Source of the DNA: Macrostomum lignano
Lineage: Eukaryota
Direction of reading: 5' to 3'
DNA: 64,000 nucleotides
Assembly (NCBI GenBank): GCA_002269645.1
Contig: NIVC01003161.1
Span: forward strand, 1 to 64,000
Positions 13,876 to 63,111 of this stretch are shown piece by piece. The notes under the pieces are model-generated. The model saw only the letters and a list, made by a program, of their open reading frames with translations. It had not been told where the DNA came from and did not search any database. The translations under genes and the position numbers were made by a program. Position 1 is the first letter of the stretch. The number at the start of each line of letters is the position of its first letter.

Positions 13876-14905
13876 TTTTCGGCTACTCAACCTTGTTGCC
13901 TACTTTATCCCAACTGAAAACTCTATGTCAGATGCCTATTCTACTCCCGCTGCCGACTCTACCCCCACGCCAGGCAAAGTAGTAGGCCCGTTGCCTACTC
14001 TACCCCAGCTGCCGACTCTAAGCCAGCAGCCTATATACTCTACTACCGCTGCCTAATCTACTATTTTATATCGCTGCTTAACACTACCTTCACTGCGAAT
14101 AAATAGATACACATGTATTTAAAGTAGACGGGTTCAAAATGAAAGGCACACAAAAAGCATTATAAGCCTGAAATTTGAATTCACGCCAAAACCAGTAGCT
14201 ATATATAACGAATGTCCGTGCTTGAAAATTAATTATATATTTGTTTTTTTTAAACCGGATGCCCCCACCGTAGCGTGGCAACTAAAAGACGCATTCGCTA
14301 TCAATTTTATGACAAAACTTTTCTGTTCGTTACTTTGGTTTAAAGCGAAAAGCCATTATAAGAATATAATAAAATACATTATTTCTTATTCGCAAAGTAC
14401 GAGCTAGCTAATTTCTTCCCAAAGGCAAGAAGCAACTGTTGATGGGAAAACTAGAAATAATATTAATAATAAAACAGCATTACGATCAATTGATAAAAAA
14501 AATTGCAAAGCGAATTTTATGCAAATGATAGCTAAAGTACTGACACCGTTTGATAAAACAAACTAAACGGTTTTGTTTTAATTTTAATCACGAATCGAAG
14601 TGAACCGCTTTAAAATCTTCTTAATAATACATTTTCTAAAAAAATGAGATTCTAGATAAACAAATAACTGATTTATTAATTTGTTTTGTATATAAAGTAA
14701 ATCAAAACAACAGCCAAATACGGGAACAGAATGGGTTGTATACATAAATATTCCTAAAACTGTTTTTACTTTAAATGTCCAATTCAGCGCTGCTTTGTTG
14801 TAAAAATATATCTAAATAAATCATAACGATATTTTATCGGACTTTACTTGTATGCATAAAAGTACATCATATCAAATTATATTCTAGTGAACAGCATATA
14901 CATGT

Positions 14906-14948
14906 CAAGGACGACTAGGAACACTTCGTTATAGTCTAGTAGTCCTTG
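14906..14948. mobile_element. 43-bp micro-MITE of the CAAGGAC family with 8-bp TSD
   Basis: CAAGGACGACTAG...CTAGTAGTCCTTG (12/13 inverted match), flanked by ATACATGT at 14898-14905 and 14949-14956. Confidence 0.85.
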
Positions 14949-16368
14949 ATACATGTACAGTGTGTATAGTACAATAAGTGTAAAATACTGGGTAATTTAG
15001 ATTCCCTAATATTATTATTAGCACGAAGTACGCTCGTAATATAATAATTACTTGGTTTCATATACATATTGTTTACTATTAAACATCATATCACAGTGCA
15101 GAAATTTTTAAGGATTCATAACATTACATAAAACAACAAATACAACTTTGCTGAAAAATTTAGGAAGTGCCACGAATAAGAGAAAACAAATGATTTGGAC
15201 ACATGAAAAATAATGATTTGCCATTTTCGAAAGAACTAAAACTAAAATTTTATTCAAAATTCAGCAACAAAAGTATCCAGGTCGATACAGCGAATTTTCA
15301 ACGCATCACAAAGCCGGAAATTCCGGTATCATAGATTTGTTATAAATAGCGAAATAAGCCTTGAACCAACAACAGACTGCGCACAAACAACGAGGCAATT
15401 AATACAACAATCTAGTACTGATGGGTAAAATCGCCCTCTCCGATTTTACTATTGACAAAATTAACTACACGAAATCCGAGTCCAACTTTTTCCGGCTTTT
15501 TTGGTGTCTCTTTTTGGTTCACACGGACATTTTCGACAACGAGAGAGAAGCCCATTTAAACATAGAATAAGTTTTTTTAAACGACACTAATTATTACACC
15601 GAGTAAAGTGGGTTTTCTCCAATATTAAAAAAATACGTACCTGGTGCTTAATAAACTGCCGTTGCTGTGCAGGTGAGGTGGCCGCGGCTTTGAGAAACGA
15701 AACACCAATCGCGAACACAATAAAAACCTCGATTTGAGCGAACAGAAGCAGAGCAGCGCGAAGCAAAAAAAATTAAATTGCTTTGCTTTTCTCTAGTTTT
15801 ATCCGACACCAAAAATTAGAAAATGATAGTGCATGGCTCGTATGAAACCCAAAAGTTTTATGGTACGTGATAGTTAGAAATAAGAAAGAAATTACCGAGT
15901 GTGCTCTCTAATGAAAGCGACGCGTTTTAGATTGACATTCATTTTGCCCCTCCATTTTGCTTAAAAAGGCATTCCCTACGTTTTTATCAACGGATTTGAC
16001 ACCTAAACTGTGCAAATTTTACCATAAAATAGGTTGGGTAACTACACCATTCAGAATGATCTTACTAAGTAAGCTCAAAATTATATAGTAAGGAAAATAT
16101 TGAAAGGTTAAAAATAATAAATAAATTTCTATGAAAATAGTGAAAGAATAAAACAAGAATCAGTTTCTGCTCGGCTAGAAAAGTCGTTAAATTTTTCGAA
16201 ACTTCTCCACACTTCGTATCGTATTGAGCAAATTAATAAAATCATTAAACAAATGGAACTAGTTGACCCCAACTAAAGTCTAAAGATCCCCATTACAAAT
16301 ATATGGCTCGATGGCTTTTTGTCCATAAATAGGTATATTTGTCGCAAAAATATATGGATAGAATTAAT

Positions 16369-34302
<17,934 letters not shown>

Positions 34303-38702: not shown

Positions 38703-41700
38703 TCATCCCTGCTGATAAACGGACTCGAATGGCGGCCGCGGTCCGATATTGTAACCCCGATACCGGCAAAACAAAAACGTGGCTCCAACGCTCACGGCAG
38801 CCAGAACGCAGGCCAAAGTAGCCGACGAAAGCAGGAAATGCCCCCTCAGCCGGAAGCTCTTCGACACTGGCTGGTCGCCGCCGAGCCAACACGCAGCCGG
38901 ATCGCAATTCGTCCATCGCTGCGCTTCGCCAACGCAGAAGTCGTGCGGCGTAACGTTGCCCAGCACGCGTTTGTTGATGCAGCTGCGCAGCGAAATGGAA
39001 CGCCTGTTGCCGTTGGCGTTGCCGCACTCCGGCCGGCAGCGGTCCCACTGCGACCAGGGACTCCAAATGCCAGTCCATTGTGCGCAAGTTGGCCCGCTGT
39101 AGCCAGAGTTACATTTGCAACGACCTGAATAGCAAGCAGGCGTGGAAATGCACATATTTCCACCTAATGACCACCTAATGACCAGACACATCTAATGACC
39201 ACAGAGACACAGGCACCGAGTGCAAAGACACAGCTAATGACCGCAGAGACACAGGCACCGAGTGCAAAGACACACCTAATGACCGCAGAGACACAGACAC
39301 CGAGTGCAAAGACACACCTAATGACCACAGAGACACAGACACCGAGTGCAAAGACACACCTAATGACCACAGAGACACAGGCACCGAGTGCAAAGACACA
39401 GCTAATGACTGCAGAGACACAGGCACCGAGTGCAAAGACACACCTAATGACCGCAGAGACACAGGCACCGAGTGCAAAGACACACCTAATGACCACAGAG
39501 ACACAGGCACCGAGTGCAAAGACACAGCTAATGACCAGAGAGACACAGACACCGAGTACAAAGACACACCTAATGACCACAGAGACACAGACACCGAGTG
39601 CAAAGACACAGCTAATGACCACAGAGACACAGGCACCGAGTGCAAAGACACACCTAATGACCACAGAGACACAGGCACCGAGTGCAAAGACACAGCTAAT
39701 GACCGCAGAGACACAGGCACCGAGTGCAAAGACACACCTAATGACCACAGAGACACAGGCACCGAGTGCAAAGACACAGCTAATGACCGCAGAGACACAG
39801 GCACCGAGTGCAAAGACACAGCTAATGACCGCAGAGACACAGGCACCGAGTGCAAAGACACAGCTAATGACCACAGAGACACAGGCACCGAGTGCAAAGA
39901 CACACCTAATGACCACAGAGACACAGGCACCGAGTGCAAAGACACACCTAATGACCACAGAGACACAGGCACCGAGTGCAAAGACACACCTAATGACCAC
40001 AGAGACACAGGCACCGAGTGCAAAGACACACCTAATGACCACAGAGACACAGGCACCGAGTGCAAAGACACATCTAATGACCACAGAGATACAGGCCCCA
40101 AATGCAAAGACACATCTAATGACAACAGAGACACAGGCACCGAACACACATGAGCTCACCATAGAGACACTTCTATCAAGTCATTCATAAGTCAGAACTT
40201 TGCCTTCTACCCTAATAAACATAAAAAAACGCAATGAACTTGCTTAAATTTCCAATTTTCGACGAAATGAAATATCCATTGATGCAGTTCATTGACAGGC
40301 ACACGTTCCTATAGGCAGCGCAGTTATCGTAGGCTAGAGCTAGGTCCCGAGCTCGTTGAAACGAGCAGACGCACTCCCAATTGGGGATCGAGTTACTCAT
40401 TTTGCTCCTACGACAAGTTCCCAGGTCTGAAACATCAAGGAATGGATGAAAGCTTTCAGAAGAGATAGAATTCATGTCTCACTAGGATTCATAGTCAGAT
40501 AGGATTCGCGTCAGATCGTGCTTCTTCATGTACCGATGGAAGTTGTGTCAGCTTCTTCATGTACCGATGGAAGTTGTGTCAGCTTCTTCATGTACCGATG
40601 GAAGTTGCGTCAGCTTCTTCATGTACCGATGGAAGTTGTGTCAGCTTCTTCATGTACCGATGGAAGTTGTGTCCGCTTCTTCATGTACCGATGGAAGTTG
40701 TGTCCGCTTCTTCATGTACCGATGGAAGTTGTGTCAGCTTCTTCATGTACCGATGGAAGTTGCGTCAGCTTCTTCATGTACCGATGGAAGTTGTGTCCGC
40801 TTCTTCATGTACCGATGGAAGTTGTGTCAGCTTCTTCATGTACCGATGGAAGTTGTGTCAGCTTCTTCATGTACCGATGGAAGTTGTGTCCGCTTCTTCA
40901 TGTACCGATGGAAGTTGTGTCCGCTTCTTCATGTACCGATGGAAGTTGTGTCCGCTTCTTCATGTACCGATGGAAGTTGTGTCAGCTTCTTCATGTACCG
41001 ATGGAAGTTGTGTCCGCTTCTTCATGTACTGATGAATTGTGTCAGCTTCTTCATGTACCGATGGAAGTTGTGTCCGCTTCTTCATGTACCGATGGAAGTT
41101 GTGTCAGCTTCTTCATGTACTGATGATATTTGTGTCAGCTTCTTCATGTACCGATGGAAGTTGTGTCCGCTTCTTCATGTACTGATGATATTTGTGTCAG
41201 CTTCTTCATGTACTGATGGAAGTTGTGTCAGCTTCTTCATGTACTGATGATATTTGTGTCAGCTTCTTCATGTACCCTTCATGTACCGATGGAAGTTGTG
41301 TCAGCTTCTTCATGTACTGATGATATTTGTGTCAGCTTCTTCATGTACCGATGGAAGTTGTGTCAGCTTCTTCATGTACCGATGGAAGTTGTATCAGCTT
41401 CTTCATGTACCGATGAAAGTTGTGTCCGTTTATTTATGTCCCGATGGTCACATCACGTGCATCAAAGCCTAATAAAATCTGGCAAAGCAAATTTCACACG
41501 CACTTACCATCATACGTGGCGCATGCGAAGTTCCCTGACACCCTGTGCAACGGATGCCGATCGGTGCACGGATCCGCCTGGCAAAGCAAATTTCACACGC
41601 ACTTACCATCATACGATGCTGACACCCTGTGCAACGGATGCCGATCGGTGCACGGATCCGCCAGACGTTCTTAGCCTTCTTTACAGACGCAGATCGTCTC

Positions 41701-47825: not shown

Positions 47826-49105
47826 TAAGTAAGTCAGCCAAAAGTTTCCGGAATTTTTTAGAATCGAACTTTTAGTTAATTTTTGTCTATGGAAAAGCTT
47901 AAAAGCAGCAACCATCTACTATGCTGTTGGCCAGCCTTATCATCACTCTTTAGCTTAACATTGCTCAGTTTCCCAGACCCTGCCTACTTAAGCCAGCAAG
48001 CGCATCCAATGGAACTGCCAAGAACTGAATGGCGAGCAATTCTGCTCAACCACTTTCATGCGGGACGCAACGCAGCAGAAGCACATCGCGAGTTGTTGCA
48101 GCTGATGGGCCCACATGCACCCTCCAAGTCGTCGGTGTACGACTGGTTCTCTTGCTTTGCTGAGGAGAACTATGAGCTGAAGGACAAGCCGAGGTCAGGC
48201 CGACCCCCTGCTGCTGATGGCGATGCCGTTCTCCAAGCCCTTGAGGACAATCCGGACTACAGCGTGCGCAAGCTGTCAGCCGCTACTGGGGTGTCCTATG
48301 GCACGGTCCGGCGGAGCCTGCATGCTGCAGACAAGGTGCCGAAGAAGCCAACTCTGGTGCCCCATGAGCTGACACCTCAGCAGCTGAGAGCCAGGGTGAA
48401 TGTGGCAACTTCGAATCTTCGCCAGGCCGGTTCGCCAAACTTTCTCAAGTCGATAATCGCTCAAGACGAGAAGTGGGTCTGCTATGAGAACCCAAGCACA
48501 TCAGCCGTCTGGGTCGATGCTTCTGAAGAACCACCCAGCTGCCCAATGCGGAACCCCCACTGCGGCAAGGAGCTGCTCTCTTTCTGGTTCTGTTCGTCTG
48601 GCCCTGTTTTCTGGGAGGTCATCCCGCATGGCATGGCTGTGAACGCGGAGGTGATCTGCAGCGAACTGGAGCAGGTCGCCCGTTTGCTGCGATCCGTGTG
48701 CCCGGGACACCGCGACAAGGTGCTCCTCTTCGACAATGCGCGGCCTCACAAAGCAAGACTCACCCAGGCCAAGCTGGCAAGCCTGGGCTTCAGTGTTTTG
48801 CCCCACCCACCATACTCGCCAGACCTCTCGCCATGCGACTACCATGTGTTCAGGTCTCTCCAGAGCTTTTGTGATGGACAGCGGTTCGCCAACAAGCAAC
48901 ATGTGGAGCAGGCAGTGCAGAAATGGATTGATTCAAAGCCTGCGAGCTTCTGGAGGGAGGGGATTGACGCATTGCCAGCAAGATGGGAGAGGGTCAAGGC
49001 CTTGAATGGCAACTACATCACATCGCTGTAAACTGTTTGTTCTTGACACTATTTGTTATAGTTTTAAAATGTTCAAATTCCGGAAACTTTTGGCTCACCC
49101 TAATA
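47826..49105 (+). mobile_element. Mariner (Tc1/mariner, D,D34D) DNA transposon, ~1.28 kb
   Basis: Perfect 21-bp inverted repeat AGCCAAAAGTTTCCGGAATTT (47836-47856 / 49075-49095). Right end reads TATTAGGGTGAGCC on the minus strand. Encloses a transposase ORF. Confidence 0.93.
48009..49031 (+). CDS. Intact mariner transposase, 340 aa
   Basis: ATG at 48009; HTH region, LVPHEL (WVPHEL-like), QDEKW, FDNARPH, YSPDLSPCDY with 34 residues between the 2nd and 3rd Asp; no stops. Confidence 0.93.
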   Translation: MELPRTEWRAILLNHFHAGRNAAEAHRELLQLMGPHAPSKSSVYDWFSCFAEENYELKDKPRSGRPPAADGDAVLQALEDNPDYSVRKLSAATGVSYGTVRRSLHAADKVPKKPTLVPHELTPQQLRARVNVATSNLRQAGSPNFLKSIIAQDEKWVCYENPSTSAVWVDASEEPPSCPMRNPHCGKELLSFWFCSSGPVFWEVIPHGMAVNAEVICSELEQVARLLRSVCPGHRDKVLLFDNARPHKARLTQAKLASLGFSVLPHPPYSPDLSPCDYHVFRSLQSFCDGQRFANKQHVEQAVQKWIDSKPASFWREGIDALPARWERVKALNGNYITSL

Positions 49106-50872: not shown

Positions 50873-51930
50873 ATGCCTCCAGGTAAAAGATAAAACTTCT
50901 TAACTGCACAGGGGCCCTTTTTAATCTACAGAAAGTATCAATTATCATTTTAGAAAATTGGATTTTCCTTGTCCTACAACTGCTGGGTTTTCTGACTGTC
51001 TGCCAGTGCAGGTCCGGAGACACCTGGACTCAGGTGCAGGTGCAGTGCCTGTCTGAGGCCGCCGCGATTTACCGAGCGCAGGCGAGCAGCGATGTGCACT
51101 GCTCTGTGATCGCGTCCAGCAAGCAGAAAGTCGGAATCATTTTGGCCCAGTTCGAGCCGGCCTCTCTCCGCTGCAGTCTCTTCCGCTACCAGTCCGTGTG
51201 TCGCGACCTTGTCTCTGGCGGTGCGAGCAGCGACTGCCGAGTGCTCATCCGATTTCCGATCAAATATCCGGCTCAGCTCAACCCGAAGCTCACAAACGTG
51301 TGGCTCGGAGACGACATGTCTGCATTTGAGAATGTCGTGTGCCAGGCTGACGAAGAGACCAACCGAATTTATCCGGTCGGAGTCCAGTGGACAGAGGAGG
51401 GCGCCGCGTTCGATGGGAGCAGCTCGTTTCTGGCCATGAACAAGAGCGACATCGGGTTCGGCACAGGCGTCACGGTGCTGCTCAGGATGAAGCGGCAGCC
51501 GCAGGTGCAGCCGCTGTTTGAGTTCCTGGACTGCGCCAACTTTGCCACAGGACCTTACTACCACCACATCTGGGAGTATTCCTCAGTATCAAGGTTCTAT
51601 GTCCTCTTCTACGATACTAATTCAGTACGTAACAGAATCATGTCGTCAGCCCTTCTTACCGCGAACGCCGGCGAGTGGATTGACCTCGGATTCACGTCGA
51701 CACCGACAACAGACTCTTATGGAATGTTTGTGAACGCCTCCTTCTTGCCGATGTCTGCCATCGATTTTCATACTGTAACTGCTTCTATTTCGGTGTCAAA
51801 GTTCTGCTTTCGGTTCGGCAAGCGGTACAATCATGCCACCCTATTCAAGGGCTCGGTCAAGGCCATCGCAATCGGCAACAGCTTCATGAACGAAACCGAG
51901 ATTCGAGACTTCTTTGCCGCCCTGCCGTGA
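50873..51930 (+). CDS. Secreted protein, 328 aa: signal peptide, Cys-rich (PAN/apple-like) N-domain, LamG/concanavalin-A-like domain (paralogue 1, intact)
   Basis: join(50873..50882,50954..51930): ATGCCTCCAG|gtaaaa...ttttag|AAAATTGG. SP WIFLVLQLLGFLTVCQC; LamG-like motifs GAAFDGSSSFL, TVLLRMK, GEWIDLGFT, FKGSVKAIAI. Confidence 0.8.
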
Positions 51931-56524: not shown

Positions 56525-56992
56525 ATGTGTACAGGTAAGAAATAAGCACAAGCATCCTGTTTCATTCGAATCCATGATTTAAAAGTGTAATTTGACCGTC
56601 AAAACCTTCAGTTTCTTTTCTGCTTGCGTGGCTTGAGTTGATGGCTTTTATGACTGGCTGCCAGTGCAGAGCCGGAGACACCTGGACTCGCATGCAGGTG
56701 CAGTACCTGTCCGATGCTGCCGCATTCCGCATCTCCGAGGCGGTCAGCCACCAGCACTGCTGCATGCTGGCATCCAGCTCTGTCTTATCCGGCATTCTCA
56801 TTGCCCAGTTCGAGCCGGCCTCTCTCCACTGCAGTCTCTTCCGCTACCAGTCCGTGTGTCGCGACCTTGTCTCTGGCGGTGCGAGCAGCGACTGCCGAGT
56901 GCTCATCCGATTTCCGATCAAATATCCGGCTCAGCTCGACCCGAAGCTCACAAACGTGTGGCTCGGAGACGACATGTCTGCATTTGAGAATG
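56525..56992 (+). pseudogene. 3'-truncated LamG-family paralogue 2
   Basis: Micro-exon ATGTGTACAG|gtaaga (56525-56534) and exon from 56612, the same structure as paralogue 1. Homology stops at GDDMSAFEN (~56992). Confidence 0.8.
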
Positions 56993-57940
56993 CATTTGTC
57001 AAATTCGCTCATTCCTGCCCTCAAATCCATAGTCAGAACTATGTTGTTTCACGATTGGCCATAGACTAAAACAGCGGGCACGGAATCTGCCGTCTTGCCC
57101 GCGAAATCGTGAGACAACACCAGAAGTTCCAGTAGTACTTCGTATATATATAGTACCCTAAATTCTGCATATGGAAATTACGTAGCCATCATAAAAATTA
57201 ATGTGCAAATTATTGCACAAGTTAGCCTGACATAGCTCGTAATGTGTTTCTGCATTCTCAGAAATTACCTCGTAAGACGCTACGCACTCGAATTCGTGCA
57301 AATGTTCGTTGTGGCCTGGTTTTATTCGCTGTACATTACGTTAGCGAGATAAGAAGTTTTCAGTTTTTCACTCAAGTTCACAATATATCCACCTTCTGGA
57401 CTTCTGGATCTTTGAGCCTCTGGGACTAATCCATAGCCAGATTTATAAGTACCACCGGGCTAACACATGATAATCAAAACTGACCGAATTAAAAAAACGT
57501 TCGCAGAAAAAGACCCTATATAGAGTGCGGTGTTGGCACTAACCGTTTTTTTCCTAATATTGTGCTGATAGTGCAGGTGGGAAAAGCCAAGCTGCTCACC
57601 AAACCTGGTAGTTTAAGTGGTAGCTAATTACTAGCCTCAAGTACTCCAGCAATGCTCATTAGCTCATTTATCCTGAGAGTTGTCCCTAATTATTTCAATA
57701 TTTGACTATCGCTAAGAAAAGCTAATAGAAGAGGAGACGATGGATATAGGAAAGTCAGCGTGATATCTTTAAATACAGCAGTTTAGCCTTGTCAGAAATT
57801 CTGCATTTGAAGACATTAAATTATTATATATGAATTCCTACTCTTATTCATTCTTGCAGCATATTTTGGACATGAACTGCTGTCAGACAGTCAATAATAC
57901 CTTCACTTTTAAAATTTCAAAGGTTTTAATTTCATTTCAG

Positions 57941-58990
57941 ATTTTTTTATTTTATTGATACAACTGCTGTAGGGCTTTTTGAAATGCTGTCTGGGCAGGT
58001 CCGGAGACACCTGGACTCAGGTGCAGGTGCAGTGCCTGTCTGAGGCCGCCGCGATTTACCGAGCGCAGGCGAGCAGCGATGTGCACTGCTCTGTGATCGC
58101 GTCCAGCAAGCAGAAAGTCGGAATCATTTTGGCCCAGTTCGAGCCGGCCTCTCTCCGCTGCAGTCTCTTCCGCTACCAGTCCGTGTGTCGCGACCTTGTC
58201 TTTGGCGGTGCGAGCAGCGACTGCCGAGTGCTCATCCGATTTCCGATCAAATATCCGGCTCAGCTCAACCCGAAGCTCACAAACGTGTGGCTCGGAGACG
58301 ACATGTCTGCATTTGAGAATGTCGTGTGCCAGGCTGACGAAGAGACCAACCGAATTTATCCGGTCGGAGTCCAGTGGACAGAGGAGGGCGCCGCGTTCGA
58401 TGGGAGCAGCTCGTTTCTGGCCATGAACAAGAGCGACATCGGGTTCGGCACAGGCGTCACGGTGCTGCTCAGGATGAAGTGGCAGCTGCAGGTGCAGATC
58501 TTCTTCGATTTTCTAAACTGTGCTGACTTCGAAACCGGACCCTTCTACCACCGTATCTGGGAGTTCGCCGCTGCTTCTAAACTCCTTTTCGTGATCAAAA
58601 CCGAAGCCGGTGCCACTCCCACACGTTATCAATCCAAGGACCACTAGAAGTTGCCGAAAGACAACGGTCACTTCTAGTGGTCCTTGTATCAATCTTCGAC
58701 AACTCCGCGGACTTCGAACGCCAACGAGTGGGTGAACATCGGCTTCACATCGACTCTAGCGGCTGACTCGACTCCAGCGGAGCGTTCGTGAACGACGCCT
58801 CTTGCCGACAGCCTCCTTCAGCCTGATAGCTAATTCTAGCTATACTCTGCTGCCTCAGTTCTGCTTCAGATTTGGCAAGCGACTCAGTAATGACCGAATG
58901 TTCAAAGGCACAGTGAGGGCAATCGCCATGAGCGGGGCTTCATGTCCAAAAGCGAGATCCGCTAATTCTTCGCTGCTATTCATTGATTTA
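57941..58990 (+). pseudogene. Disrupted LamG-family paralogue 3
   Basis: Near-identical to paralogue 1 over 57995-58479, then diverged. TAG in the signal region, 52-bp TIR insertion, 5-bp duplication and further frameshifts. Confidence 0.82.
58635..58686. mobile_element. 52-bp micro-MITE of the CAAGGAC family with 17-bp perfect TIRs and 8-bp TSD
   Basis: CAAGGACCACTAGAAGT / ACTTCTAGTGGTCCTTG flanked by TATCAATC at 58627-58634 and 58687-58694. Confidence 0.92.
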
Positions 58991-61262: not shown

Positions 61263-61531
61263 AAGCATCAGAGCAAGCAGCAGAGCTCAGCAAGTGGCAA
61301 GAGAGCCACACCATTGGCTGAAGCCGATGCACATCTGCGAGAGAAGCGCTATGTCGAAGCCATGCTTGCTTACTCCATGCTGATTGACAGCCCAGATGGA
61401 CAGCAGTCAGGCTTTCTGCCTGACGCCTATGCTGGTGAGTCTGACAGGCTGGCATAACAGTGCTTGGTGAGCTTTTAATCAGTGGATCATATATATTTGG
61501 CTACTTCTTCCCTGGTAAATCTGGCTTTATA

Positions 61532-61588
<57 letters not shown>

Positions 61589-61589
61589 G

Positions 61590-61664
<75 letters not shown>

Positions 61665-61719
61665 GTGTCTGTGTGTCTGTTTGTCTGTCTGTCTGTGTCT
61701 GTCTGTCTGTCTGTCTGTG

Positions 61720-61758
<39 letters not shown>

Positions 61759-61787
61759 GTGTCTGTCTGTCTGTCTGTCTGTCTGTG

Positions 61788-61818
<31 letters not shown>

Positions 61819-61877
61819 GTGTCTGTGTGTCTGTTTGTCTGTCTGTCTGTGTCTGTCTGTCTGTCTGTCTGTCTGTG

Positions 61878-61966
<89 letters not shown>

Positions 61967-61981
61967 GTCTGTGTGTCTGTG

Positions 61982-62020
<39 letters not shown>

Positions 62021-62102
62021 TTGTCTGTCTGTTTGTCTGTCTGTCTGTTTGTCTGTCTGTCTATTTGTCTGTCTGTCTGTCTGTCTGTTTTAGTTTCTGT
62101 CA

Positions 62103-62144
<42 letters not shown>

Positions 62145-62160
62145 TTTAGTTTCTGTCAGT

Positions 62161-62208
<48 letters not shown>

Positions 62209-62775
62209 TTTAGTTTCTGTCAGTCTGTCTGTCTGTTTTAGTGTCTGTCAGTCTATCCACCTCCAATGGTCCCGCAGGCCGCAGCGAGTGCCTCCGCCAG
62301 CTGGAGCAGCTGTACCACAGTCTGGAAGACGCCGATCGGGTCTGCCTGCTGCGGCCCCGCTGGCCCCGCGGCCACGCTCTCCGTGGCGAGGCCCTGCTAG
62401 CCGGCGTCAGCCAGCCGAGGCTCTGGCAGCTTTTCGCGAAGCGGCCCGTCTCGATCCCGGCGACGAGCTGCTGCTCGATCGGGCGCGTCGTTCAGTGGAA
62501 GAGATTCGCAGCGAAGCGTCAGCAACCAGCCGGCTGATGAGGCGGTCAGTTCTGCTGGCTGCCGGAGTGGCGCTGCTGCTGGCTCTGCTGGATTTGGCGG
62601 CGCTGGAAGGCCGTCTGCACTCGCTGCTGCCAGCGTGGCTGTTATACAGCCTGGCCTACTGTCTGTCATTTTGCTGCTGTTTCGGCATTGGCTGGGCGTA
62701 CAGATGGCTGCTACGACAGCATAAGCGAGACCTGTTAAAAAAACCCATTGATTTGTTGGAGCACCTCAAGCAGAG

Positions 62776-62868: not shown

Positions 62869-63111
62869 CAAGGACCACTGTAGAAAATACGACGTAAAAC
62901 TCAAAGATTGTGCTACTTTTTTGGACTTCGATTTCGTGGAAAAAATAGACTGCAGAAGATAAGAAAAAAATCGTTCATATTAAATCACATAATCAATGAC
63001 TGCATTAATTTGATCAGGGGCAGTAAAGATCACATTTTTGCAGGAAATCGGCCTCGGAAAACACTACACGATCTTTGAGTTTTACGTTCTGTTACTCTAC
63101 AGTGGTCCTTG
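62869..63111. mobile_element. 243-bp MITE of the CAAGGAC family
   Basis: 16-bp perfect TIR CAAGGACCACTGTAGA, extended by the subterminal match ACGTAAAACTCAAAGAT(T/C)GTG. Flanks GAGAGGAG / AAGAAGAG match 6/8. Confidence 0.85.

What the first reader, a model, noticed from the sequence alone, without database searches (positions are those of the whole stretch)
58627..58694. 52-bp micro-transposon with 17-bp perfect TIRs and 8-bp TSD inserted in a LamG-paralogue exon
Seen: TATCAATC-[CAAGGACCACTAGAAGT-18 nt-ACTTCTAGTGGTCCTTG]-TATCAATC. Removing the element and one TSD copy (60 nt) restores a frame reading TRYQSSTTPRTSNANEWVNIGFTST, which aligns with paralogue 1 NRIMSSALLTANAGEWIDLGFTST, so the empty site is effectively visible in the paralogue. 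The insert supplies the TAG that ends the ORF at 58647. Established: CAAGG termini with 8-bp TSDs fit both the hAT and P-element superfamily consensuses. Inference: an essentially TIR-only element, much smaller than usual MITEs, can land in genes and disrupt them.
Basis: partly seen in the sequence, partly recalled or inferred. Interest (0 to 1): 0.75.

Follow-up and report, generated by a model that had tools for sequence, protein, structure and literature searches.

The report
Tiny transposon remnant in flatworm pseudogene
A 52-base hairpin flanked by an 8-base duplication in a Macrostomum lignano gene copy is a real cut-and-paste transposon insertion from a family with at least two more members in the window, but it is not shown that so small a unit jumped by itself, and the gene copy is broken in other places too.

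Summary
The intact paralogue (copy A, 51034-51930) lacks these 60 bp.

New here:
- The window is Macrostomum lignano.
- The terminus CAAGGACNACT occurs six times, as three correctly oriented pairs: E1 (52 bp, the finding), E2 (43 bp, 14906-14948, perfect TSD ATACATGT) and E3 (243-bp MITE-like element, 62869-63111, 16-bp TIRs, 6/8 TSD).
- A fourth hairpin (58 bp) with the same terminus lies on an animal-derived metagenome contig.
- A UniProt M. lignano gene model ends in the same element-derived residues, so the insertion is not a local assembly error.

So this is a multi-copy transposon family with 8-bp TSDs. It is hAT-like by its termini, but the superfamily is unresolved.

Not supported:
- That the 52-bp unit is itself mobile. 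Every miniature has a different core, and no second copy of E1 was found.
- That it killed a working gene. Copy C has at least 3 further frameshifts and a nonsense codon.

My preferred reading is in-situ reduction of a longer element (excision footprint or internal deletion), at about 0.5. A mobile micro-MITE stands at about 0.35. The finding is a new member of a known kind, of moderate interest.

The parts
58627..58634 (.). E1 left target-site duplication, TATCAATC
   Evidence: identical 8/8 to 58687-58694
58635..58651 (+). E1 left terminal inverted repeat, CAAGGACCACTAGAAGT; it contains the in-frame TAG (58645-58647) that ends the copy C ORF
58652..58669 (.). E1 18-nt core, TGCCGAAAGACAACGGTC (a weak 4-bp stem plus an 8-nt loop in the hairpin fold). 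It is not templated from the flanks and does not resemble the interior of E2 or E3.
58670..58686 (-). E1 right terminal inverted repeat, the perfect reverse complement of the left one
58687..58694 (.). E1 right target-site duplication, TATCAATC
14898..14956 (.). E2: second miniature member. The element is 14906-14948 (43 bp), CAAGGACGACTAG...CTAGTAGTCCTTG (TIR 13 with 1 mismatch), flanked by a perfect 8-bp TSD ATACATGT (14898-14905 and 14949-14956), in AT-rich non-coding DNA.
62869..63111 (.). E3: 243-bp MITE-like member. It has perfect 16-bp TIRs CAAGGACCACTGTAGA, sub-terminal inverted repeats (62892-62944 against 63035-63087, 75%), and flanks GAGAGGAG / AAGAAGAG, a 6/8 degenerate TSD (local chance about 0.001).
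57979..58647 (+). Copy C of the host gene (ConA-like/LamG-type lectin domain family), with its ORF truncated by E1. The remainder, 58695 to about 59040, is homologous to copy A but split over three frames and carries a nonsense codon.
51034..51930 (+). Copy A: intact 298-aa paralogue, 100% identical to UniProt A0A1I8FXT3 over the shared part. The uninterrupted homologue of the insertion site is at 51628-51651.
56638..57069 (+). Copy B: truncated third paralogue. Its homology ends at about 56992, before the insertion-site region.

Best explanation
E1 is what remains of an insertion by a cut-and-paste DNA transposon family of Macrostomum lignano. The family makes 8-bp target-site duplications and has the terminus 5'-CAAGGACNACT(GT)AGA. 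The termini are hAT-like, but the superfamily is not established.

Shown:
- The insertion is real and non-random.
- It is flanked by a perfect 8-bp TSD.
- It is absent from the paralogue.
- The family has at least three members in 64 kb.

Inferred, and my preferred mechanism: a longer non-autonomous or autonomous member inserted into copy C of a lectin-domain gene. It was then reduced in place to its two 17-bp ends plus 18 bp. The reduction came either from transposase-mediated excision followed by imprecise end-joining, or from aborted gap repair or central deletion of a palindromic element. Both TSD copies survived. The remnant is probably immobile.

Its present effect is to place a TAG in frame and truncate the ORF of a gene copy that is decayed in other places as well.
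For: Real TE insertion:
- Exact anatomy.
- Precise 60-nt excess over copy A, with the frame restored on removal.
- Shuffle and bacterial-hairpin controls.
- An independent M. lignano gene model, A0A1I8GAB7, ends ...TRYQSKDH, the element-derived residues. It differs from window copy C elsewhere, so a second locus or assembly carries the insertion.

Family:
- Six exact hits to the 10-base terminal motif form three inverted pairs; about 0.1 is expected by chance.
- E2 has a different perfect 8-bp TSD. E3 has a 6/8 TSD, P about 0.001-0.004.
- L003:44-101 has the same terminus on animal DNA.

In-situ reduction rather than self-mobility:
- E1, E2 and L003 all have different lengths (52, 43, 58 bp) and unrelated cores, unlike an amplified master copy.
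- No other copy of E1 exists in the window at up to 3 mismatches.
- No protein among 5.8 billion, including the M. lignano UniProt proteome, contains E1's open-frame translation.
- P-type transposases cut 17 nt inside the TIR, so donor sites keep both TSDs plus up to 17 nt of each end. That is E1's architecture.
- From established knowledge, Ac/Ds, hobo, Tol2 and P all need sub-terminal sequences of about 100-250 bp for mobility.
- From established knowledge, ends 18 bp apart cannot be looped into one synaptic complex.
Against: - No longer element with E1's exact 17-bp TIR was seen, so the supposed parent is hypothetical.
- The 18-nt core shows no sign of being templated filler (P=0.38-0.64). 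It also shows no homology to E3's sub-terminal sequence (P>=0.6), so neither repair route is positively supported.
- L003's arms are 20 bp perfect, longer than a strict 17-nt P-type footprint allows.
- hAT-type excision removes the whole element, so hAT affiliation and a simple footprint are in tension.
- Two of the three members in the window are miniatures with intact TSDs, which is also what a mobile micro-family would give.
- The peptide test only sees copies inside annotated CDS in an open frame, so it excludes only a high copy number.
Confidence: 0.5

Rival explanations
1. Mobile micro-MITE. The family's transposase needs only the 13-20-bp TIR, so TIR-only hairpin units of 43-58 bp are themselves transposed. 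E1 arrived in copy C as a 52-bp unit.
For: - E1 and E2 have perfect 8-bp TSDs of different sequence.
- Three independent miniatures of similar design exist: almost the whole element is a hairpin with a 5-8-nt loop.
- Two of the three members in the window are miniatures.
- There is a precedent for a TIR-only MITE: MADE1, 80 bp, from Hsmar1 (my knowledge).
- 52+8 = 60 nt, and 4 of 6 frames are open, so such units would often be tolerated in exons.
Against: - No two miniatures share a core.
- No second E1 copy was found in the window or in any gene model.
- The superfamilies known to make 8-bp TSDs require sub-terminal sequences.
- Synapsis of ends 18 bp apart is sterically implausible (established knowledge, not tested here).
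Confidence: 0.35
2. Specifically a P-superfamily (THAP9-type) excision footprint. Staggered cleavage 17 nt inside each end left 17+17 nt, joined through 18 nt of filler. This is a sub-case of the best explanation, listed separately because it fixes the superfamily.
For: - E1's inverted repeat is exactly 17 nt and then stops.
- P elements give 8-bp TSDs and 17-nt 3' extensions.
- E3 has sub-terminal inverted repeats, as P and Pdre2 do.
- E2's arms are 17 nt or less.
Against: - P and Pdre2 termini begin CATG/CATAC, not CAAGG.
- E3's natural TIR is 16 bp, so 17 may simply be the family's TIR length.
- L003 has 20-bp perfect arms.
- The filler is not detectably templated.
- No THAP-type or any other matching transposase lies in the window.
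Confidence: 0.15
3. Not a transposon at all: a chance hairpin, an assembly or sequencing artefact, or a structured RNA gene.
For: - Hairpins can cause assembler fold-backs, as seen in L003.
- There are weak Rfam miRNA-hairpin matches.
Against: - Direct 8/8 flanking repeats are not what fold-back artefacts give; those give inverted flanks.
- Chance expectation is about 1e-6 or less per window.
- The same insertion is read in an independent gene model.
- Family members exist with other TSDs.
- The Rfam scores are 18-23 bits against gathering thresholds of 98-105.
Confidence: 0.02

Closest known systems
hAT-superfamily non-autonomous elements (Ac/Ds-type deletion derivatives, hAT MITEs such as Drosophila Mar)
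   Same: 8-bp TSD; short TIRs (13-20 bp); a terminus fitting the YARNG pattern (CAAGG). The family is heterogeneous and shares little beyond its termini, as described for Ds (abstract of PMC3260210).
   Different: No hAT transposase is linked to these ends. The TSDs do not follow nTnnnnAn. Known mobile Ds and hAT MITEs are about 100 bp or longer and keep sub-terminal transposase-binding repeats. hAT excision does not normally leave TIR remnants.
P-element excision footprints and internally deleted P / Pdre elements
   Same: 8-bp TSD retained on both sides; up to 17 nt of each TIR retained because of the 17-nt staggered cut; sub-terminal inverted repeats in the longer member E3.
   Different: The terminal sequence differs (CAAGG against CATG/CATAC). 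No THAP9-type gene was seen. The L003 arms are 20 bp. P-like elements have not been documented in M. lignano in the papers I could read.
MADE1 (80-bp Hsmar1-derived MITE of primates)
   Same: TIR-only architecture: two TIRs around a few bases, so nearly the whole element is a hairpin.
   Different: MADE1 is Tc1/mariner with a TA TSD, is 80 bp long, and exists as thousands of near-identical copies. Here the TSD is 8 bp, the size is 43-58 bp, and every copy seen has a different core. (MADE1 facts are from my own knowledge and were not checked here.)

Membership tests
Cut-and-paste (class II, TIR) transposon insertion | Terminal inverted repeats immediately flanked by a direct target-site duplication of fixed length | tested here: met
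   E1 has 17/17 TIR and 8/8 TSD. E2 has 12/13 TIR and 8/8 TSD. E3 has 16/16 TIR and 6/8 TSD.
Cut-and-paste (class II, TIR) transposon insertion | An empty site exists (the same sequence without the element and with one TSD copy) | tested here: inconclusive
   Only a diverged paralogue (copy A, 51628-51651) is available. It lacks the 60 nt and keeps the frame, but the site itself is only about 50% identical. No allelic empty site could be reached.
Cut-and-paste (class II, TIR) transposon insertion | Multiple copies with the same termini at unrelated loci | tested here: met
   Three pairs in the window, plus L003.
MITE (miniature inverted-repeat transposable element) | Small, non-coding, with TIRs and a TSD | tested here: met
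   43-243 bp with no coding capacity.
MITE (miniature inverted-repeat transposable element) | Many copies of the same element (homogeneous internal sequence), showing that the small form itself amplified | tested here: not met
   E1, E2, E3 and L003 share only 11-16 terminal bases. There is no second E1 in the window. Peptide probes for E1 and E3 find nothing in the protein collection. The genome itself could not be searched, so this is negative within limited reach.
hAT superfamily | 8-bp TSD | tested here: met
hAT superfamily | Terminal motif YARNG and short TIRs (consensus recalled from memory) | tested here: met
   All eight ends begin CAAGG. TIRs are 13-20 bp.
hAT superfamily | Target preference nTnnnnAn (recalled from memory) | tested here: not met
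   TATCAATC matches neither position. ATACATGT matches only the T at position 2. GAGAGGAG/AAGAAGAG matches only the A at position 7.
hAT superfamily | Autonomous copy encoding a transposase with BED zinc finger, RNase-H-like DDE and hAT dimerisation domains between the same TIRs | not testable with these tools
   There are no unpaired or long-range pairs of the terminal motif in the window. The only transposase ORF found is mariner-type.
P superfamily | 8-bp TSD and sub-terminal inverted repeats | tested here: met
   TSDs as above. E3 has sub-terminal inverted repeats at 62892-62944 and 63035-63087.
P superfamily | Terminal sequence like known P or Pdre ends (CATG.../CATAC...) | tested here: not met
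   CAAGGAC... against CATACCTGTCAAC for Pdre2 and CATGATG for Drosophila P (memory).
P superfamily | Footprints retain no more than 17 nt of each end | tested here: inconclusive
   E1 retains exactly 17 and E2 retains 13, but L003 retains 20 or more. The stagger length outside Drosophila is unknown.
P superfamily | THAP9-type transposase in autonomous copies | not testable with these tools
   Same reason as for hAT.
Laminin_G_3 / ConA-like lectin domain (host gene) | Significant match to the Pfam model or to solved structures of the fold | tested here: inconclusive
   Copy A scores E=0.041, 14.5 bits against a cutoff of 27.6, with nothing at full length. Relative P0008 scores E=1.2e-5, 25.9 bits. 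The family profile hits CBM40 modules 5fre/5fra at E=6e-4. The AF2 model is unusable, pLDDT 32.

The most novel reading that the evidence does not exclude
The 43-58-bp hairpins are themselves mobile. That would make them TIR-only elements smaller than any eukaryotic MITE I know of, moved in trans by an 8-bp-TSD transposase that needs nothing but 13-20 bp of terminal sequence. Ends that close together would perhaps have to be synapsed between two DNA molecules, or through an extruded hairpin. At 60 nt per insertion and with 4 of 6 frames open, they would often be tolerated in exons as 20-codon in-frame additions. Published repeat libraries that discard everything under 200 bp would never show them.
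Probability: 0.3. Interest if true: 0.65.

Novelty: new member of a known kind. Interest (0 to 1): 0.38.

Why it matters
This defines a DNA-transposon family of the regeneration model Macrostomum lignano that appears not to have been catalogued. The family has the terminus CAAGGACNACT and an 8-bp TSD. The published repeat library dropped elements under 200 bp, so members this small could not have been recorded there.

Two further members within 64 kb suggest thousands of copies in the 764-Mb assembly. This is an extrapolation.

If the miniatures are excision footprints, they record past transposase activity and could be used to date it and to map donor sites. If they are mobile, they set a new lower size limit for eukaryotic transposable DNA.

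For gene annotation, the element explains why at least one UniProt model (A0A1I8GAB7) ends where it does.

Tried and rejected
- Exact 17-mer in viral contigs gave one hit with no inverted partner, so it is chance.
- The 13+13 hairpin pattern in metagenomes gave two hits. L002 is a chance match inside a 66%-GC imperfect 330-bp inverted repeat. I first dismissed L003 too, then re-read it as a genuine 58-bp relative whose left flank is an assembler fold-back.
- Bacterial genomes gave 0 hits with the strict pattern and 31 background hairpins with the relaxed one. I used these as a negative control.
- The protein-to-contig index could not reach any M. lignano contig.
- Peptide probes from E1's four open frames and from E3's open frame found no hits.
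- Templated-filler test of the cores against the flanks was not significant.
- Cores against E3's sub-terminal sequence were not significant. A resemblance I thought I saw by eye between E2's and E3's right arms was not supported.
- Sensitive blastn and nhmmer searches with E3 against the window found no further copies.
- The flanks of E2 and E3 have no paralogous sites in the window.
- Pfam on ten large ORFs found only a mariner-type transposase.
- AlphaFold2 on copy A gave pLDDT 32 and was unusable, so I did not run a fold search.
- Rfam gave only sub-threshold miRNA-hairpin noise.
- A literature search for the terminal motif returned only unrelated primers. The three M. lignano papers I searched say nothing about hAT, P or MITE families.

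Full report
**1. The observation.**

| Coordinates | Sequence | Role |
|---|---|---|
| 58627-58634 | TATCAATC | left TSD |
| 58635-58651 | CAAGGACCACTAGAAGT | left TIR |
| 58652-58669 | TGCCGAAAGACAACGGTC | core |
| 58670-58686 | exact reverse complement of the left TIR | right TIR |
| 58687-58694 | TATCAATC | right TSD |

- The duplication is exactly 8 bp.
- As single-stranded DNA the 52 nt fold into a near-perfect hairpin: -20.2 kcal/mol, z = -9.4.
- A scan of the window for a perfect TIR of 12 or more with any TSD returns only this element outside microsatellite tracts.
- A relaxed scan returns two structures against a mean of 0.07 in shuffles.
- Hairpins with the same 10+10 terminal bases do occur as background in 596 Gb of bacterial DNA (31 hits) and in viral contigs (2 hits). 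None has an 8/8 flanking direct repeat, and the mode is 2/8.

The structure is therefore real and far beyond chance.

**2. The host.**

The three relatives returned by the first protein search for the flanking ORF are all Macrostomum lignano UniProt entries. One of them, A0A1I8FXT3, is 100% identical to the intact paralogue in the window. The window is therefore M. lignano.

The gene exists in three copies here:
- Copy A, 51034-51930: an intact 298-aa ORF.
- Copy B, about 56638-57069: truncated.
- Copy C, 57979-58647: carries the element.

On the 'LamG' label:
- Pfam gives nothing at full length.
- For the domain part of copy A, Laminin_G_3 scores E = 0.04.
- For a relative it scores E = 1.2e-5, just under the cutoff.
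- A family profile hits CBM40 lectin modules in the PDB at E = 6e-4.
- The AlphaFold model was unusable.

'ConA-like/LamG-type lectin domain' is therefore reasonable but weakly supported.

**3. The empty site and the damage.**

- Copy A lacks the 60 nt.
- Joining C's flanks with one TSD copy extends the homology by about 25 codons...TRYQSSTTPRTSNANEWVNIGFTST against ...NRIMSSALLTANAGEWIDLGFTST.
- The homologous position in A is 51628-51651.
- The TAG that ends C's ORF lies in the left TIR.

Copy C is broken in other places too. Its last 70 or so codons are spread over three frames, with changes near 58770, 58795-58802 and 58940, and they contain a nonsense codon. There is also a stop just upstream of the ORF. 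So the element truncates the ORF, but I cannot say it inactivated a working gene. Some of the frameshifts could be long-read assembly errors.

**4. Independent support for the insertion.**

UniProt A0A1I8GAB7 (249 aa) ends ...TPTRYQSKDH. Those are the residues read from the TSD and the first 13 nt of the element, up to its TAG.

It differs from window copy C at three residues, all C-to-T changes in the window, and in the N-terminal region. A second locus or assembly therefore carries the same insertion, which rules out a local assembly artefact.

**5. The family.**

This is the main new result. The terminus CAAGGACNACT occurs six times exactly in the window, as three correctly oriented pairs, where about 0.1 matches would be expected by chance.

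| Element | Location | Length | TIR | TSD |
|---|---|---|---|---|
| E1 | 58635-58686 | 52 bp | 17/17 | TATCAATC, 8/8 |
| E2 | 14906-14948 | 43 bp | 13 with 1 mismatch | ATACATGT, 8/8 |
| E3 | 62869-63111 | 243 bp | 16/16, CAAGGACCACTGTAGA | GAGAGGAG / AAGAAGAG, 6/8 |
| L003 hairpin | L003:44-101 | 58 bp | 20/20, CAAGGACCACTAGAAAATGT | cannot be assessed |

- E3 also has 75%-complementary sub-terminal inverted repeats. Its 6/8 flank match has a local chance of about 0.001.
- Metagenome contig L003 carries an RVT_1 fragment and a PHD finger, so it is animal DNA.
- L003's left flank is a perfect fold-back that runs to the first base of the contig. That is an assembler artefact, so no TSD can be read there.

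Two additional members in 64 kb extrapolate to the order of 10^4 copies in the 764-Mb assembly (size). This is an inference with a wide error.

**6. Which superfamily?**

- An 8-bp TSD, 13-20-bp TIRs and a CAAGG (YARNG-type) terminus point to hAT. The hAT target preference, recalled from memory, is not met.
- P elements also give 8-bp TSDs and have sub-terminal inverted repeats, but their termini begin CAT....
- No autonomous copy is in the window. There are no unpaired termini, and the only transposase ORF is mariner-type, at 47883-49031.

The superfamily is unresolved; I lean towards hAT-like.

**7. Did the 52-bp unit move as such?**

This is the crux, and I could not settle it because the M. 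lignano genome was out of reach.

Against self-mobility:
- The miniatures differ in length and have unrelated cores. Similarity stops after 11-16 terminal bases.
- No second E1 lies in the window.
- No protein among 5.8 billion contains E1's open-frame translation, nor E3's.
- From established knowledge, the characterised transposons with 8-bp TSDs need sub-terminal sequence.
- From established knowledge, ends 18 bp apart cannot be looped into one synaptic complex.

A ready alternative exists. P-type transposases cut 17 nt inside each TIR, so donor sites keep both TSDs plus up to 17 nt of each end. That is exactly E1's 17 + 18 + 17 layout. Aborted gap repair, or central deletion of a palindromic MITE such as E3, would give the same product.

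Against the remnant reading:
- The core is not detectably templated.
- It does not resemble E3's interior.
- L003's arms exceed 17 nt.
- E3's TIR of 16 bp suggests that 17 may simply be the family's TIR length.

I put in-situ reduction at about 0.5, a mobile micro-MITE at about 0.35, and other explanations at 0.15 or less.

**8. Comparison with what is known, and novelty.**

- The architecture resembles MADE1 (TIR-only, 80 bp, mariner-derived), P-element footprints and Ds-type deletion derivatives.
- It is a member of the general class of TIR transposon insertions.
- It fails the MITE criterion of homogeneous amplified copies, as far as I could test.
- It cannot be assigned to hAT or P.
- The published M. 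lignano repeat library discarded elements under 200 bp, and the three papers I searched mention no such family. The family therefore appears uncatalogued.

This is a new member of a known kind, with interest 0.38. The open possibility of true mobility at 43-58 bp would deserve about 0.65.

No step had to be referred. The host gene is a lectin-domain paralogue, not a toxin or effector, and no viral genome was involved.

Noticed in passing
window 47883-49031 (+): A 382-aa ORF with Mos1-type HTH_48 and Transposase_1 (mariner DDE) domains. This is a mariner-family transposase gene about 2 kb upstream of copy A. It is unrelated to the 8-bp-TSD family.
   Followed up: partly
window 57979-58560 vs UniProt A0A1I8GAB7: All three amino-acid differences between window copy C and the UniProt copy-C-type model (S>F, R>W, P>L) are C-to-T changes in the window. 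For the two where I compared the DNA (R>W, P>L), the C lies in a CpG in copy A. The 5' 540 bp of copies A and C are 94% identical while the 3' parts are strongly diverged, which suggests gene conversion or a mosaic origin.
   Followed up: partly
window 31001-33229: Long (AGAT)n tracts are followed about 1.5-2 kb downstream by the complementary (ATCT)n orientation. This gives inverted repeats of 135 nt or more and a very skewed composition (GC skew 0.55 at 30-32 kb).
   Followed up: no
window 61460-62241 (+): About 0.8 kb of a degenerate (CTGTCTGT...) microsatellite that is open in three frames (CLSVCLSV... pseudo-ORFs). GA- and G-rich low complexity follows immediately upstream of E3.
   Followed up: no
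L003 1-144: A perfect 144-bp palindrome ending exactly at the first base of the contig. The assembler folded back through the 58-bp hairpin element and copied the right flank in reverse. This is a caution for any hairpin-pattern search in metagenome assemblies.
   Followed up: yes
L008, L010, L014, L030, L032, L034 (Rhodocyclales, Sulfuritalea and Burkholderiaceae MAGs): A recurrent 42-nt hairpin, CAAGGACAACTTCCC(G/T/C)GGC-loop-GCC(C/A/G)GGGAAGTTGTCCTTG, with a conserved 19-20-bp stem, compensatory changes in the stem and variable loops. It may be a conserved bacterial structured element or a terminator. It is unrelated to the flatworm family.
   Followed up: no
P0001 (UniProt A0A1I8H4S8): This gene model contains the N-terminal 175-aa module of the family twice in tandem. 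P0005 fuses the domain to a clathrin heavy chain and P0015 fuses it to a P450. The UniProt names of the family members (COIA1, MAM, DOMON, UBC core) are mutually inconsistent. These look like annotation artefacts in a repeat-rich assembly.
   Followed up: no
window 40528-41247 (+): A 239-aa ORF with a weak, sub-threshold Teneurin EGF-type cysteine-repeat match and several spurious low-complexity hits. It may be an exon of an EGF-repeat gene.
   Followed up: no
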